A stretch of DNA of 64,000 nucleotides from the NCBI RefSeq assembly GCF_006345805.1, contig NC_043006.1, forward strand, positions 19,654,001 through 19,718,000, read 5' to 3'. The translations under genes were made by a program, and so were the position numbers. A model generated the notes under the pieces. It searched no databases and had not been told where the DNA came from. It saw only the letters and a program-made list of their open reading frames with translations. The DNA is from Octopus sinensis. Lineage: Eukaryota. Positions 34,473-52,921 of the stretch are shown here, in pieces. How positions within the stretch are numbered: the stretch's first letter is position 1; each line of letters starts with the position of its first letter.

Positions 34473-34770
34473 ATGCATAACATTCTATGGTTAATGATAA
34501 TTGCTTTATACTGTTTCCAACCAGTGCAGACATGGTGGCTTTGGAATAAAAAAAAATCTCCAAACGAATGCATAACCCAAAACATAACTCCATGGTCTGC
34601 CTGCAGACATAGATGTGGAGATATCTCTAAAAGACAAGTAATTGCCCTATGCACACATCATAAAGACAACTTACAGAAATGTGCTCCAGTCTGTGGAATC
34701 CCAGACACCAGAACATCAAAACCATGTTATCCTAGTGGATGCCATTCATCACAATATTGTTGTCCAAATC
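34473..34770 (+). CDS. variable first coding exon A: signal peptide + 10-Cys TSP1-like domain (99 aa + 1 nt)
   Basis: MHNILWLMIIALYCFQPVQT|WWLWNKKKSPNEC..WSACRHRCGDISKRQV..C..C..C..RTSKPCYPSGCHSSQYCCPN. Hydrophobic N-terminus, WSxC..CG..R motif, donor AATC|GTGAGT, phase 1. Confidence 0.85.
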
Positions 34771-36309
34771 GTGAGTACTTACTGTTATATATTTTTTTTA
34801 TATTGTTTGCAGACTACTTGAAGATGCAATATATATATATTGCAAACAACTTGCAAGTACAAGGGCTACCAGTTGAAAGCTCCGCATACCAGATGCTGGC
34901 AAGTTTATGATGTCATCAGGAGAGAATATATGCCATTTTGGGGCCTTCCTCTCGGTGGCATCATTTTGCAAACCACCCACCCTCATTGAAATGAAGCTCT
35001 GCTTACTAGACCAACCGGTTATTAGGTTTCGCTCAATATTCTTTCTTGCTCATAGTCTCTTTTTTAACCAAATCTAGTGGCTCACCTTCTCCACTGTAGT
35101 CTGGACATCACTCAGGGTGGTATTTGTTCTATGATGAGTAACAGGATTTGTTGAATTTTCTGATGCTTTAAATAAAGTATATATATATATATATACATAT
35201 ACATAATGGGTTTTTAGTTTCCATCTACCAAATCCACTCACAAAATTTTGGTCAGCTTACGGTTATAATAGAAGACACTTGCCCAAAGTGTCACATGATT
35301 GGGAAAATATGCTTCTCAAGTACACAGCCATGTCATTTACAAGGTACCACTGGTACTGATGATGTACCAGTCTGTTGCAGGGTTAAGCCACTAGAAATAG
35401 GGTAAACTAGTCTATTGAAGGAGAAATCGTCATTTGTCACTGATACTAAGGGTAACACAGTCTATTGATAGGTAAATCCACTAGCTGCCATATGTACTGA
35501 TAATACTTCAGTTTGTTGATAGGTTAACCCACTAGCTGCTAATGGTGTTGAGGGTACTCTAGCCTATTGATGGGTTAACCCACTAGTTTCCACTGGTACT
35601 GAAGGTACACCAATCTGCTAATAGTTTAACCCACTAGCTGCCACTGGAACTGAGGATATTCCAGTTTCTTGATGGGCTAACCAACAAACAGGCACTGGTA
35701 CTGGGGGTACACCACATCACCCTGAAATGCATTCACAGCATTACCTTCCACCCGATAGCTAGATTGTGATCGCCATTCACTTCTACAGCGCCGTCTGTCT
35801 ATACCTTACCCCTTACCCTCTTACCCAACCATGCATCACCCTCTATCCATCCACCCACACTCTCACATCATCATCGTCGTCATTATTGTCATCATCATCA
35901 TCATCATTATCGTCTTTGTCATTGTCATCATCTTCACCCATTTCTACCCTCTACTCAACCAAAACCACAGCAATAACACGTAATATAAATCAAGGAAATG
36001 TTGATAACATTGATAACATAAATTTCTTGAATCTAAACACAAAATATCTTTTAAATATCTATTAATCAGGATATTGTCCAAACTATACTGGTCCACTATG
36101 ATTAAAAGAGCTTTAGTGGCTCAAGCAACTGTTACTTCCTGACCAACAAAATTTTCACTGCATTCCTTGTCATATTTCTAAGCAGTTTTCATTCTGCCCA
36201 TTGCAGAGAGTAAGTCAACAAGGAATGACTTTTGATTTCTTAGTAATTACTTAAAGAATTAAATTGTGCAGACGAATTTGGTCAAAAGAAATTCTTTATT
36301 TCATAAAGG

Positions 36310-36574
36310 ATGCATGACATTCTATGGTTAATGATAATTGCTTTATACTGTTTCCAACCAGTGCAGACATGGTGCACAATCACAGAAATATCTCCATGGT
36401 CTGCCTGCAGACATAGATGTGGAGATATCTCTAAAAGAGAAGTAAGTACCGCATGCGTACAAGATGAAGACAACTCAGAGAAATGTGCTCCACTCTGTGG
36501 AGTCTCACACATAAGAACATCAAAACCATGTTATCCTAGTGGATGCCACATGTTTCAATATTGTTGTCCAAATC
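36310..36574 (+). CDS. variable first coding exon B (88 aa + 1 nt)
   Basis: Paralog of A with an in-frame 33-nt deletion, all 10 mature Cys kept and the same phase-1 donor AATC|GTGAGT. Confidence 0.85.
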
Positions 36575-36979
36575 GTGAGTACTTACTGTTTTATAATTTT
36601 TTTATATTGTTTGCAGACTACTTGATGCAATATATATATATATATTGCAAACAACTTGCAAGTACCAGGGCTACCAGTTGAAAGTTCCGCATACCAGATG
36701 CTGGCAAGTTTATGATGTCATCAGGAGAGAATGTGTGCCATTTTGGGGCCTTCCTCTCGGTGGCATCATTGTGCAAACCACTCACCCTCATTGAAATGAA
36801 GCCCTGCTTACTAGACCAACTGGTTATTAGGTTTCGCTCAATATTCTTTCTTGCTCATAGTCTCTTTTTTAACCAAATCTATTGGCTCACCTTCTCCACT
36901 GTAGTCTGGACATCACTCATAGTGGTATTTGTTCTATGATGAGCTAGGCCTAGCAACAACAACAACAACAGTCGCCTCA

Positions 36980-37142
36980 CAATGTTTCCAACAAATCCTC
37001 TACATCCAACTTCGATTGGAAAATGCACTGTTTTCCAGCCTGTGTTTTCAGATTCCTCAACGAGGTTTTTATAGCAGTCGATCATTCAATCCTGAGTGGC
37101 ATCCTGATGGATGTCACTCATCGCAATATCATTGTCCAAACC
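36980..37142 (+). pseudogene. relic first exon C
   Basis: ..WHPDGCHSSQYHCPN then AACC|ATAAGTACTCACTACTTTATAATACT, which aligns with D's AATC|GTGAGTACTCATTACATTATAATACT. Donor GT->AT, Cys lost, no signal peptide. Confidence 0.7.
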
Positions 37143-37323
37143 ATAAGTACTCACTACTTTATAATACTATTAATATTCTCTTCCTAATTTCAGTAATAAG
37201 TTTATTATTATTTAAACACACACAACTGTGGCTGTGTGTCTAAAAAGCTTGCTTCCCAATCACATGGCTTCGGGTTCATTCCCACTGTGTGATACCTTCA
37301 ACAATTGTTGTCTACTATATATT

Positions 37324-50600: not shown

Positions 50601-50960
50601 TGCTCATTTGTATTTTTGTGAGTCAATGTTTAGAGAAAGGGTGCAACGACCGTATGCCTCGATTGTGAACCCGTTGGTGGCTGTTAAAGGTTGGCTCCGC
50701 TTTCCCTGATGGTGGTCCCTTGCCGATTCCGCGATCACGCTGACTTCTGCTCCTGTGTCGATTAGGAGCCTGCGCCTGGAGCTGCAATTGCAGACATAGA
50801 GGAGTATTTGGTCATGTCTGCCGGCCACCAGGGCGTTCAATGTCGGCTGGCCCCTGAAGTTTCTCTGGGTCGCTGGTGAAGGGGTCTCGAAGCTACATGA
50901 TTGTTTGTACTTTATTGCCTTTACCCCGAACTTTGCGACGTAGATGCACAGGTCATCTAA
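47640..50960 (-). mobile_element. decayed Ty3/Gypsy LTR retrotransposon (CsRn1-like), gag 3' end-PR-RT-RH-IN, PPT and 3' LTR start
   Basis: Protease LIDTGAEVSVI, RT KTAVITPF..PFGLKNAAQAFQR, RNase H ALTVDTSD and NPVADALSR, integrase NIDLVGPLP / ILSDRGPQFTS / FHPQTN..VERFHR. PPT GGGGTGGGGTAG before TGTAGGG at ~47748. Many frameshifts; no 5' LTR seen. Confidence 0.85.
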
Positions 50961-51560
50961 TACGCCTTCTTAAATAGATGTTGCCCACGAGAGTCTCGCT
51001 GTGGTCTCGCGCATGGCAACATGGTTGTAGGCGTGTTTCGGACATGGTAATGGCTGCCGGCGAGATCTCGTACAAAATGGCACTGGCTTCTTGTGTCACA
51101 CAACAGATCTATCCACGACAGACTCCACCTTATGCGACACATCATAGAGAGGGCTGGAACCAAAGCCGGCTTCCGTGGGAAACTGATCAATTTGGGTCAA
51201 TGCAAAGCATTCAAAAGAGTCGACCATCGCTACTTCGAAGCCATCCTGAAAGCAATCGGTTTTGGACCCATTTTCAGTGGCTGGATTGCTTCAATGCACA
51301 GCGGAACCTGCTCGGGAGTCAAAGTAGATGGCCACCTATCGGAACCATTTTGCTTCACATGCTCTGTCTATCAAGGCTACCTGTTGTCACCTCTTCTGTA
51401 AATGCTGGCTCTAGAGCAAATTCTGCGGAAAATGAAACAGTTGCGAGGCATCCCTTTCGAACTGGAACAGTGCCATTTTTGTTCTATGTGTTGATAATAC
51501 CTTAACCTCTATGTTAATAACCGAGCATCTATGTTCTACTTGAGCATGTTGGTAGAACAC
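50960..51560 (+). mobile_element. L1/Tx1-clade LINE RT fragment
   Basis: RSIHDRLHLMRHIIE..LINLGQCKAFKRVDH..GFGPIF..WI..V.G.LSEPF..SVYQGYLLSPLL. Confidence 0.8.
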
Positions 51561-52607
51561 TGACAAGCTTTTCTCCTCTTTGAGCTCCCGCCAGTTTTTT
51601 TTCCTATTCGCTCCGCTATACTGCGTGCCGTCACTTCGGTATACGTTGTCTTATTTCTGCAGGATGATGACCATGTCAGTTACATAATCATCATCATCCC
51701 CATCATCATTTTCATCATTGTCATAGCCATTATCATCTTTGATATAATCATCATCAGCACCACCACCATCACAACCACCGCCACCACTACTACTTTGATC
51801 ATTCTCATTGTCATCATCGTTATCAACTTCGTCGTCGTCGTCATCATCATCATCATCATCATCATCATCATCATCATCATCATCACCATCATCACCATCA
51901 TGATTTATTATTGCTATTATCCTCATTGTTATCAATTGTCATCGTGCGGAGGCACATGGCCTAGTGGTTAGAGCAGCGGACTAGAGGTCGAGGGATCGCG
52001 GGGTTCGAATCTCAGACCGGGCGATGTGTGTGTTTATGAGCGAAACACCTAAGCTTCACGTGTCTCCGGCAGAAGGTAATGGCGAGCTTCAGCTGACTCT
52101 TTCGCCACAACTTTCTCTCACTCTTTCCTCTTGTAGCTTACCTGCGACGGACCGGTGTCCTGTCCAGGTGGGGAACCTATACACCAAGGAAACCGGGAAA
52201 CCAGCCCTTATGAGCCAGGCGTGGCTCGATAAGGAACAAACAACAAATTGTCATCGTCATCATTATCAACATCATAATAATTTATTATTGTCATCATCAA
52301 CTTCATCATCATTTTTGCTGTCGTCATTATCGTTGTTGCTGTCATTGTCGTCATCATCATTATCATCATCCTCACACACATGCATGCAAATATATTAACA
52401 ATCCCAAGTATCAAAAATGGAAAGCAAAGAAGACAATTATTTTCAAAGAACGTGTCCGATTTGGAAAACATCTCTTCCTCTTTCTTTCTCTCTTTTCCCC
52501 TCTCTTTCTAGCCATCTATCAATCTATCTGTCTATCTCTATGTCATCTCTCTCTCTCTCTCTCAGCCACTACACACATTTTTTTCTCTCCTTGTTTTTTC
52601 TGTGTCC

Positions 52608-52643
52608 CTTTCTGTAGAAGAGCGTAGGCTCGAAACGTAAAAG
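52608..52643 (+). ncRNA. minimal hammerhead-like motif (Penelope-type), core variant
   Basis: CUUU-CUGUAGA-A-GAGC(GUAG)GCUC-GAAA-CGU-A-AAAG: perfect stems I and II, palindromic ACGU stem III, but A6->U in the core. Confidence 0.45.
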
Positions 52644-52780
52644 ACTTTTTCTATACTTGAGCATTATACTAATACATCTGTTTGTTTTGTACACCACCTG
52701 TCTTCGTCTTTTGTTGTTGTTTTTCGTAAACTCTCCCTATATATTCTAATTTACCATGATATTTACTTCCCTGTCTCTAG

Positions 52781-52921
52781 AATGTTCAAATTATATTGAG
52801 AATTGTCAAACCATGAGTTGCAACAGCAATCAAAGACCTTTCTGTTCTACATGTAAACAGTACAATGTGAGAGGAGCAGAATTTTCTATGGCCTGGCCTG
52901 AAGGACCACTCAAATGCAATC
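52781..52921 (+). CDS. shared exon 2, 6-Cys module
   Basis: CTGTCTCTAG| acceptor, C|GTGAGT donor, 141 nt, phase 1-1. (Q)CSNYIENCQTMSCNSNQRPFCSTCKQY..PLKCN is in frame with exons A, B and D. Confidence 0.85.

What the first reader, a model, noticed from the sequence alone, without database searches (positions are those of the whole stretch)
34473..52921. Tandem array of variable first exons in front of one shared set of constant exons
Seen: three intact homologous exons (A 34473, B 36310, D 43672) plus one relic (C). Each intact copy has its own ATG, signal peptide, 10-Cys TSP1-like domain and identical phase-1 donor. Only one copy of exons 2-6 exists in the window and it is in frame with all three. 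No exon-2-like sequence was seen between the copies. Known: vertebrate clustered protocadherins and UGT1 use multiple promoter-bearing variable first exons spliced to common constant exons. Inference: this octopus locus may independently do the same, making a large secreted protein with swappable N-terminal Cys-rich recognition domains. I do not recognise this as described for this family.
Basis: partly seen in the sequence, partly recalled or inferred. Interest (0 to 1): 0.92.

Follow-up and report, generated by a model that had tools for sequence, protein, structure and literature searches.

The report
Duplicated alternative first exons, octopus gene
One giant secreted-protein gene of Octopus sinensis carries three intact, related "start" exons (each with its own start codon, signal peptide and 10-cysteine module) in front of a single set of downstream exons, so it can probably make proteins with different tips; this is a small new example of a known gene layout, with one copy evolving unusually fast.

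Summary
Exons A (34473-34770), B (36310-36574) and D (43672-43972) are intact homologues. Each has an ATG, a hydrophobic leader, 10 Cys and the same phase-1 donor. A truncated relic C has a dead donor. Exons 2-6 are single-copy in the window, and E2/E3 in the whole genome. The window is Octopus sinensis.

RefSeq splits the gene into LOC118765007 and LOC115216576. The partial LOC118765007 protein begins with a B-specific "MF" and continues into E2-E4. The O. bimaculoides orthologue XP_014775210.2 joins D to E2.

O. bimaculoides also has an intact A/B-type exon, the same relic and D, so two cassette types predate the species split. A/B is a later 1.87-kb tandem duplication. Keeping the ORF, ATG and all 10 Cys by chance has p about 0.006-0.012 per lineage.

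B gained 22/88 residue changes. Its nonsynonymous rate is about 6x its own flanks (p about 1e-11).

Alternative promoter/first-exon use is therefore the best reading, confidence about 0.6. No transcript reads could be checked, and A has no direct support. With 2-3 cassettes this is a modest member of the Pcdh/UGT1A/sDscam kind, not a large diversity array. "TSP1-like" is not supported by Pfam, PDB or AlphaFold.

The parts
33268..35138 (+). Tandem duplication unit 1. It holds cassette A: about 1.2 kb upstream, exon A, and 368 nt of intron.
   Evidence: Self-blastn aligns 33268-35138 with 35136-36943 at 91.8% identity over 1876 columns.
34040..34472 (+). Conserved upstream region of cassette A, a candidate promoter and 5'UTR. 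It contains blocks invariant in all 6 cassettes compared, for example TTGATTAAAA.AG.TTTAAGTG.CTCA.G and TAAGTCAAC.A.GAATGACT.
   Evidence: 6-sequence alignment across two cassette types and three species. The region is unique to the three cassettes in the genome, apart from a TCA microsatellite. No TSS data.
34473..34770 (+). First exon A: ATG, hydrophobic leader, 10-Cys module, phase-1 donor.
   Evidence: It has only 4 aa changes since the A/B duplication. No transcript evidence.
35136..36943 (+). Tandem duplication unit 2, holding cassette B.
   Evidence: Flanks differ from unit 1 by 2-5%; the mature-peptide part differs by 15%.
36310..36574 (+). First exon B: ATG, leader, 10-Cys module lacking 11 codons, phase-1 donor. 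It is fast-evolving.
   Evidence: The RefSeq partial protein XP_036362137.1 starts at the B-only ATG at 36550 and continues into E2-E4. The B lineage has 26 substitutions and 22/88 residues changed.
37055..37144 (+). Relic C. Only the 3' end of an E1-type exon survives. The donor GT has become AT at 37143-37144 and CC has become HC. The following intron resembles D's.
   Evidence: The same relic with the same defects is in O. bimaculoides at L014:7832-7875.
43206..43671 (+). Conserved upstream region of cassette D, a candidate promoter and 5'UTR.
   Evidence: It differs from O. bimaculoides by 7.3%, against 11.8% in the adjacent intron.
43672..43972 (+). First exon D, the conserved canonical copy.
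   Evidence: It is 100% identical in O. vulgaris and 92% (aa) in O. bimaculoides. dN/dS is 0.26. It is used in XP_014775210.2.
47000..51500 (-). GC-rich decayed retroelement inside the D-to-E2 intron. It is not part of the gene product.
   Evidence: GC 0.43-0.49. There is an RT/RNaseH-like remnant at 49310-49777 on the minus strand.
52781..52921 (+). Constant exon 2 (phase 1-1, 6-Cys module). It is the first acceptor downstream of all cassettes.
   Evidence: Single-copy in the genome. Present in XP_036362137.1 and XP_014775210.2.
54867..54992 (+). Constant exon 3 (phase 1-1, EGF-like CSW.N..CWPGTC module).
   Evidence: Conserved family-wide.
59675..59929 (+). Constant exon 4 (phase 1-1). The two RefSeq models of O. 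sinensis abut inside it.
61503..61647 (+). Constant exon 5.
62913..63586 (+). Constant exon 6 (GGGY domain). The gene continues beyond the window, to about 3300 aa in total.
   Evidence: It is 100% identical to XP_036362221.1 residues 83-297.

Best explanation
This is one gene. Its O. sinensis RefSeq models LOC118765007 and LOC115216576 are orthologous to O. bimaculoides LOC106872661. It encodes a giant (about 3300 aa) secreted protein rich in FN3-like repeats.

The gene has three alternative promoter/first-exon cassettes. Each cassette carries about 440 bp of conserved upstream sequence, an ATG, a signal-peptide-like leader, a 10-Cys module and one phase-1 donor.

Proposed mechanism: transcription starts at one cassette. 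That cassette's donor is joined to the first acceptor available, E2 at 52781. Downstream cassettes are removed with the intron. I expect they lack a usable acceptor, but I did not test this. The products share everything from E2 onward and differ only in the N-terminal Cys-rich module.

History: two cassette types, A/B-type and D-type, already existed in the common ancestor of O. sinensis and O. bimaculoides, alongside a dead third copy (C). In the O. sinensis lineage the A/B cassette duplicated in tandem. Copy B then underwent a burst of amino-acid replacement in the loops between conserved cysteines.

Shown: the structure, the phases, the copy number, conservation and decay across species, the rate asymmetry, and two annotated junctions. 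Inferred: promoter activity, actual in vivo use of each cassette (A especially), and any role in binding specificity.
For: Structure.

Annotated junctions:
- XP_036362137.1 is an exact substring of the B-spliced protein only. It starts at the ATG at 36550, which exists only in B.
- XP_014775210.2 starts with the D-type exon joined to E2.

Conservation: O. bimaculoides has an intact A/B-type exon (L014:7039-7314) with ATG, 10 Cys and an identical donor. It also has relic C with the same lesions, and D.

Neutral simulations, conditioned on the observed number of substitutions:
- P(no stop, ATG kept, 10 Cys kept) = 0.012 for the B lineage.
- P = 0.006 for A_sin versus AB_bim.
- All indels among copies are in frame.

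B lineage: 26 derived substitutions in 264 nt, against 26 in 1312 nt of its own flanks (Fisher p = 1.7e-8). pN is 0.118, pS 0.041 and the flank rate 0.020 (binomial p = 9e-12). The A lineage has 5 derived substitutions.

Upstream 440 bp: shared by all cassettes, with invariant blocks, and not a genomic repeat.

The A/B flank divergence is 3.4-4.9%. This exceeds the 1.16% noncoding divergence between O. sinensis and O. vulgaris, so A and B are unlikely to be alleles.
Against: - No RNA-seq, Iso-Seq or CAGE could be consulted. Three protein-database searches found no transcript-derived fragment carrying any E1-E2 junction.
- The B-to-E2 support is a partial Gnomon model whose evidence I cannot inspect. 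Only its first two residues distinguish B from A or D.
- The one O. bimaculoides RefSeq protein the searches returned for LOC106872661 uses D, and its name carries no isoform label. No annotated protein with its A/B-type exon was found.
- Across species the A/B-type exon's dN (0.106) is about equal to the noncoding divergence (0.08-0.12). dN/dS of 0.54 does not differ significantly from 1 (p = 0.23). The case for constraint therefore rests on which sites changed, not on overall rate.
- The A/B-type upstream region is no more conserved than intron (11% versus 8%).
- A has no direct expression evidence of any kind.
Confidence: 0.6

Rival explanations
1. Only one cassette (D) is a working first exon. 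A and B are non-functional by-products of segmental duplication that have not yet decayed, and the RefSeq B-to-E2 model is an annotation artefact.
For: - D alone shows clear purifying selection (dN/dS 0.26, p = 0.0065).
- D is the only first exon in the one complete RefSeq model I saw.
- The overall rate of the A/B-type exon is near neutral.
- The A/B duplication is young, so A's intactness carries little information.
Against: - The A/B-type exon has stayed intact in two species, while relic C was already dead in their ancestor.
- Neutral survival probabilities are 0.006 and 0.012 on independent branches, and every indel is in frame.
- B's exon evolves 5-6 times faster than its own flanks, and the changes are almost all nonsynonymous. 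Relaxed constraint cannot produce that.
- A 25-nt initial coding segment 16 kb upstream, skipping D, is an unlikely ab initio choice.
Confidence: 0.15
2. A and B are functional but are not alternative heads of the big gene. They are expressed on their own, either unspliced or spliced to an unrecognised short exon, as small secreted Cys-rich peptides derived by partial gene duplication.
For: - Each cassette has its own upstream region, ATG and leader.
- Read-through ORFs of 124-146 aa exist.
- A conserved signal sequence with a hypervariable mature part on a fixed Cys scaffold is the pattern known from secreted toxin and peptide families. That comparison rests on my own knowledge.
Against: - The donor ATC|GTGAGTAC and its phase are perfectly kept in all six intact copies and lost only in the relic.
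- The RefSeq model joins B to E2.
- Between relic C and D, the interspecies identity (88-92%) is the same as in neutral flanks, so no extra conserved exon is apparent.
- The intron tail after the donor is not conserved between the A/B and D types.
Confidence: 0.12
3. A and B are two haplotypes or alleles of one cassette, placed in tandem by assembly error. The real locus would have two cassettes, as in O. bimaculoides.
For: O. bimaculoides has a single A/B-type copy. Read depth could not be tested.
Against: - There are no Ns in the window, and the junction at 35136-35138 is clean.
- Flank divergence of 3.4-4.9% is 3-4 times the O. sinensis-O. vulgaris divergence of 1.16%.
- Derived changes in the flanks are symmetric between A and B, as expected for paralogues of equal age.
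Confidence: 0.05

Closest known systems
Vertebrate clustered protocadherins (Pcdh alpha/gamma) and UGT1A loci
   Same: - Tandem homologous first exons, each encoding the N-terminal variable part.
- Each is preceded by its own conserved upstream sequence.
- One shared set of downstream exons, with the same splice phase throughout.
- A pseudo-exon relic lies inside the array.
   Different: - Only 2-3 cassettes instead of about 9-60.
- The variable exon encodes a roughly 80-aa Cys-rich module, not a whole ectodomain or substrate-binding domain.
- No evidence of stochastic or CTCF-mediated promoter choice.
- The protein family is unrelated.
- Expression is untested.
[quoted passage not shown] 2016, PMC4835542)
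   Same: An invertebrate precedent for tandem 5' variable cassettes, each with its own promoter, spliced to constant exons (abstract read).
   Different: sDscam cassettes span 2-4 exons encoding Ig domains and number in the tens. Here each cassette is a single exon, there are three, and the protein is different.
Ordinary tandem exon duplication giving alternative first exons or promoters (own knowledge; common in animal genes)
   Same: Small copy number, recent local duplication of promoter plus exon 1, and in-frame interchangeability.
   Different: One type has been kept for longer than a species split. One copy shows a replacement burst about 6 times the local neutral rate.
Secreted Cys-framework peptide families with a conserved signal and a hypervariable mature region (own knowledge)
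   Same: In A versus B the leader differs at 1 of 63 nt and the mature part at 15%, with all Cys fixed.
   Different: Here the module is apparently the tip of a 3300-aa protein rather than a free peptide. No homology to those families was found.

Membership tests
Variable-first-exon / shared-constant-exon locus (Pcdh / UGT1A / sDscam organisational class) | Two or more tandem homologous first exons, each with its own start codon and N-terminal coding part | tested here: met
   A, B and D are intact. They are 53-69% identical at the amino-acid level.
Variable-first-exon / shared-constant-exon locus (Pcdh / UGT1A / sDscam organisational class) | A single shared set of constant exons in a compatible splice phase | tested here: met
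   E2-E6 are single-copy in the window, and E2/E3 in the genome. All three first exons end in phase 1 and read through E2-E6 without a stop.
Variable-first-exon / shared-constant-exon locus (Pcdh / UGT1A / sDscam organisational class) | Each variable exon is preceded by its own promoter | tested here: inconclusive
   About 440 bp of upstream homology with invariant blocks is present in all cassettes of three species, and it is not a repeat. No TSS or promoter-activity data exist. The A/B-type upstream region is no more conserved than intron.
Variable-first-exon / shared-constant-exon locus (Pcdh / UGT1A / sDscam organisational class) | Transcripts join each variable exon directly to the first constant exon | tested here: inconclusive
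   Annotated protein models give B-to-E2 in O. sinensis and D-to-E2 in O. bimaculoides. None exists for A. No reads were accessible.
Variable-first-exon / shared-constant-exon locus (Pcdh / UGT1A / sDscam organisational class) | A large repertoire (tens of cassettes) generating cell-to-cell diversity | tested here: not met
   Only 3 intact copies exist in the whole O. sinensis genome, and 2 in the O. bimaculoides locus.
Thrombospondin type-1 repeat (TSP1, PF00090) | Significant match to the TSP_1 profile, or to a solved TSR structure or fold | tested here: not met
   No Pfam family at E<=1. No PDB sequence at E<=10 with a 6-sequence profile. The AlphaFold model has pLDDT 59 and is mostly helical, so it cannot be used for fold search. 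Only a W-S-x-C...C-G motif is visible by eye. There is a weak BLASTP alignment to the N-terminus of a family member.
Giant FN3-like-repeat secreted/membrane protein family of marine invertebrates (uncharacterised; includes XP_036362221.1 and XP_014775210.2) | Homology of the constant part: the GGGY domain of E6, the CWPGTC EGF-like module, and FN3-like repeats | tested here: met
   178 representative proteins match at E<=1e-3, many of them 2600-3500 aa. The fn3 family is hit at 1.8e-13. The E2/E3 modules align with family members.

The most novel reading that the evidence does not exclude
The locus is an incipient, lineage-specific variable-exon cluster. Promoter choice would swap the N-terminal recognition module of a giant extracellular protein. 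Positive selection is currently diversifying the newest cassette (B), which would suggest an arms-race or self/non-self or gamete-recognition role. Under this reading, cephalopods would have independently begun to build a Pcdh/UGT1A/sDscam-type diversity generator in an unrelated protein family.
Probability: 0.2. Interest if true: 0.6.

Novelty: new member of a known kind. Interest (0 to 1): 0.42.

Why it matters
If the three cassettes are used, this is a clean, datable example of how a variable-first-exon locus is born. It shows an old pair of cassettes, a dead relic, and a fresh tandem duplicate whose coding loops changed about 6 times faster than the neighbouring DNA.

It also corrects the annotation. 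O. sinensis LOC118765007 and LOC115216576 are one gene. The O. vulgaris model starts in a retroelement ORF.

The finding does not reveal a new mechanism, and the repertoire is too small to act as a diversity code.

Tried and rejected
1. I looked for transcript-derived protein fragments carrying E1-E2 junctions. The three searches used E1D-E3, a 6-sequence E1 profile, and E1-E6 restricted to residues 1-275. They returned only the RefSeq partial model and one genomic ORF from a third octopus species. The Logan members of the protein cluster turned out to be genomic exons with intron read-through, not cDNA.

2. I looked for the A/B copies in O. vulgaris. The retrievable locus reaches only 5 kb upstream of D, which is too short.

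3. I tested the TSP1 assignment by Pfam, by a PDB profile and by AlphaFold. All were negative or uninformative. I did not run a fold search because the model is low-confidence.

4. I considered gene conversion from D as the source of B's changes. Most B-derived states match neither D nor the O. bimaculoides copy, and the genome holds no other donor.

5. I checked whether the shared upstream region is a transposon. It is not: there are only three genomic copies.

6. I checked for a private downstream exon for A/B between relic C and D. The interspecies identity there equals the neutral level.

7. I checked whether a conserved GTAAGT about 140 nt upstream of the ATG could be a 5'UTR donor. The GT is not conserved across cassettes.

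8. The inverted-repeat call compared each region only with itself. It therefore did not test pairing between the cassettes and the E2 intron.

9. Literature searches for the locus names, the SRA runs and octopus alternative first exons found nothing specific.

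
Full report
WHAT THE WINDOW IS. The window is G000:C10:19654001-19718000 of a 2.72-Gb genome with 13,516 contigs. Database names identify it as Octopus sinensis. It has no Ns.

CHECK OF THE OBSERVATION. Reading the sequence confirms three homologous open exons:
- A, 34473-34770 (298 nt)
- B, 36310-36574 (265 nt)
- D, 43672-43972 (301 nt)

Each begins with ATG and has a hydrophobic leader (MH..LWLMIIALYCFQPVQTW; mean Kyte-Doolittle 1.6-2.2 over residues 4-16). 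Each has 10 Cys after the leader. Each ends CAAATC|GTGAGTAC in phase 1.

tblastn and an nhmmer profile find nothing else in the window except a 3' relic, C, at about 37055-37142. In C the donor GT is AT and one Cys of the terminal CC pair is lost. A six-frame search of the whole genome finds only A, B and D.

The downstream exons are:
- E2 52781-52921
- E3 54867-54992
- E4 59675-59929
- E5 61503-61647
- E6 62913-63586

All have canonical AG/GT boundaries. E2-E4 are symmetric phase 1-1 exons. Each of A, B and D reads through E2-E6 with no stop. E2-E6 occur once in the window. E2 and E3 occur once in the genome.

WHICH GENE. A HMMER scan of 1.84 billion representative proteins with E6 returns a 3050-aa protein at 100% identity (P0003). 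It also returns 177 more distant relatives, many of them 2600-3500 aa.

P0003 is XP_036362221.1, 'uncharacterized protein LOC115216576 [Octopus sinensis]'. Its cluster holds O. bimaculoides XP_014775210.2 (3300 aa) and O. vulgaris CAI9728349.1.

P0003 starts at a Met inside E4. Pfam sees only fn3-type repeats. Family members from other animals carry varied Cys-rich N-termini, followed by modules that match E2 and E3 (C..C..I.NC....C......C..C and CSW.N..CWPG.C). E1 therefore sits at the most variable end of a modular extracellular protein.

INDEPENDENT JUNCTION EVIDENCE. Searching E1(D)+E2+E3 returned XP_036362137.1, 'LOC118765007, partial [Octopus sinensis]'. Its sequence is MFQYCCPN + Q + E2 + E3 + most of E4.

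It is an exact substring of the B-spliced protein and of no other. 'MF' replaces 'SS' only in B, and the string ATGTTTCAATATTGTTGTCCAAATC occurs once in the window, at 36550. So RefSeq joins B's donor (36574) to E2 (52781) across D.

It ends two codons before P0003 begins, so RefSeq has split one gene in two.

The O. bimaculoides RefSeq protein instead begins with the D-type exon joined to E2. Its genomic locus has D at L014:10001-10300 and E2 at L014:19675.

I cannot see what evidence underlies either model. However, a 25-nt initial coding piece 16 kb upstream that skips D is an unlikely ab initio choice.

COMPARATIVE ANATOMY. The O. bimaculoides locus (L014) holds three E1-type elements:
- an intact A/B-type exon at 7039-7314, with ATG, 10 Cys and an identical donor;
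- the same relic C at 7832-7875, with the same lesions;
- D.

Two cassette types plus a dead copy therefore predate the split of the two species.

In O. sinensis the A/B cassette lies in a 1.87-kb tandem duplication (33268-35138 and 35136-36943, 91.8% identity). The A-B flank divergence is 2.3-4.9%. That is below the O. sinensis-O. bimaculoides noncoding divergence (7-12%) and above the O. sinensis-O. vulgaris divergence (1.16% over 16 kb).

So the duplication postdates the first split and predates the second. This argues against A and B being misassembled alleles, and it predicts both copies in O. vulgaris. The O. vulgaris locus I could fetch stops 5 kb upstream of D and cannot show them.

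IS THE A/B-TYPE EXON FUNCTIONAL? D orthologues show purifying selection (dN/dS 0.26, p = 0.0065).

The A/B-type exon evolves fast. For A_sin versus AB_bim, dN is 0.106 and dS 0.196, giving omega 0.54, which is not significantly below 1 (p = 0.23). dN is about equal to the noncoding divergence. Rate alone therefore does not prove constraint.

The pattern of changes does. I placed the observed number of substitutions at random:
- For A_sin versus AB_bim, no stop, an intact ATG and all 10 Cys are retained with p = 0.006.
- For the B lineage, p = 0.012.

These are independent branches. Every indel among the copies (33, 27, 3 and 3 nt) is in frame. The donor is identical in all six intact copies from three species and is broken only in the relic. 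The relic shows what an unconstrained copy looks like. I conclude that the A/B-type exons are maintained as coding sequence.

THE BURST IN B. A and B differ by 1 of 63 nt in the leader and by 2-5% in 1.6 kb of flanks. In the mature-module codons they differ by 15.3%.

Polarising the differences with the O. bimaculoides copy and D assigns 26 changes to B, 5 to A and 1 ambiguous. The flanks are symmetric: 23 A-derived and 26 B-derived changes in 1312 sites.

On the B branch pN is 0.118, pS 0.041 and the flank rate 0.020. Twenty-two of 88 residues changed, against 4 of 88 in A. The excess over its own flanks has Fisher p = 1.7e-8 and binomial p = 9e-12.

The changes cluster in the loops (codons 36-41, 57-70, 75-81 and 93-95). 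They avoid the blocks PWSACRHRCGDISKR and RTSKPCYPSGCH..QYCCPN. Most do not match D, and the genome has no other donor, so gene conversion is unlikely.

Relaxed constraint cannot exceed the neutral rate. The simplest reading is therefore positive selection, or a run of complex mutations that selection tolerated. The classical A-B dN/dS of 2.4 is not significant on its own (p = 0.16).

PROMOTERS. About 440 bp upstream of the ATG is homologous in all cassettes of three species. It has invariant blocks, for example TAAGTCAAC.A.GAATGACT about 140 nt upstream of the ATG. The region is unique to these three places in the genome, apart from a TCA microsatellite.

Homology between the A/B and D types ends about 9 nt after the donor.

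This fits 'promoter plus first exon' duplication units, but there are no TSS data. The A/B-type upstream region is no better conserved between species than the intron is.

MECHANISM PROPOSED. Transcription initiates at one cassette. Its donor is spliced to the first acceptor, E2. Downstream cassettes, which start with 5'UTR and ATG rather than an acceptor, are removed with the intron. This is the rule known for clustered Pcdh, UGT1A and chelicerate sDscam (PMC4835542).

The steps shown are the architecture, the phase compatibility, the single constant set, selection on the coding capacity of both cassette types, and two annotated junctions. The steps inferred are promoter activity, use of A, and any functional difference between the heads.

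RIVALS.
(1) Only D works, and A and B are decaying. This is contradicted by the survival statistics, the cross-species retention and B's supra-neutral rate.
(2) A and B are stand-alone small secreted peptides. This is not excluded without RNA data. It is disfavoured by the perfect donor conservation, the RefSeq B-to-E2 model and the absence of any extra conserved block between C and D.
(3) A/B is an assembly artefact. This is disfavoured by the divergence argument and the gap-free junction. It needs read depth to settle.

COMPARISON AND NOVELTY. In organisation this is the Pcdh/UGT1A/sDscam kind. It fails the 'large repertoire' feature, with 3 cassettes in O. sinensis and 2 in O. bimaculoides.

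Alternative first exons created by local duplication are common in animal genes (my own knowledge). I therefore rate it a new member of a known kind, in an uncharacterised protein family. The datable replacement burst in the youngest cassette is its most interesting feature.

The 'TSP1-like' label is unsupported.

Literature searches found no description of this locus and no report of octopus alternative first-exon arrays.

VERDICT. Confidence that at least two cassettes serve as alternative heads of the same gene is about 0.6. Interest is 0.42.

Noticed in passing
window 36550-59850 and 59857 onward (E4): RefSeq splits one gene into two O. sinensis loci. LOC118765007 (partial) ends at ...LNVTM inside E4. 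LOC115216576 starts at MPHVV two codons later. The O. bimaculoides orthologue is one 3300-aa model.
   Followed up: yes
window 48388-48624; L015:10001 onward: The O. vulgaris model CAI9728349.1 is named 'D-galactoside-specific lectin'. It begins with an ORF (MSFHSFEVNCGPRSDK...) that lies in the GC-rich retroelement block of the D-to-E2 intron. It also skips E1 and E2. This is probably a mis-annotation.
   Followed up: partly
window 47000-51500: A GC-rich block (GC 0.43-0.49, against about 0.38 elsewhere) carries an antisense RT/RNaseH-like remnant at 49310-49777 (PF17919, E = 5e-4, below the Pfam cut-off). It looks like a decayed LTR-type retroelement in the D-to-E2 intron.
   Followed up: partly
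window 57250-58070: Broken ORFs in the E3-E4 intron resemble a mariner/Tc1-type transposase (for example GDETWVHHYEAESKRQSMEW). I recognised this by eye only. One 75-aa piece (57742-57966) gave no Pfam hit at E<=0.01.
   Followed up: partly
window 5066-6951: A 490-bp unit is repeated 3.9 times in tandem at 98% identity. Its nature is unknown.
   Followed up: no
window 1598-3046; 19708-20101; 41888-42212: Long microsatellites: (AGAA)n of about 1.45 kb with strong purine skew, (ATT)n of about 0.4 kb, and (TA)n of about 0.3 kb.
   Followed up: no
window 34764-34779, 43966-43981 and 52915-52930: The donors of E1 and E2 share 12 identical bases (AATC|GTGAGTAC). E2, E3 and E4 are all symmetric phase 1-1 exons, typical of shuffled extracellular modules. 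Skipping any of them would keep the frame.
   Followed up: no
window 39078-42638 versus L014:8949-8962: O. sinensis carries about 3.5 kb between relic C and cassette D that is absent from O. bimaculoides. It is repeat-rich and includes SINE-like elements that are frequent in the window. The spacing from B to D is 7.1 kb, against 2.7 kb in O. bimaculoides.
   Followed up: partly
L012 and L013 (Logan contigs from SRR11869384 and SRR11869391): A third, unidentified octopod species has an intact D-type exon. It is 85% identical (aa) to O. sinensis D, with dN/dS about 0.27. The contigs are too short to show whether an A/B-type cassette exists there.
   Followed up: partly
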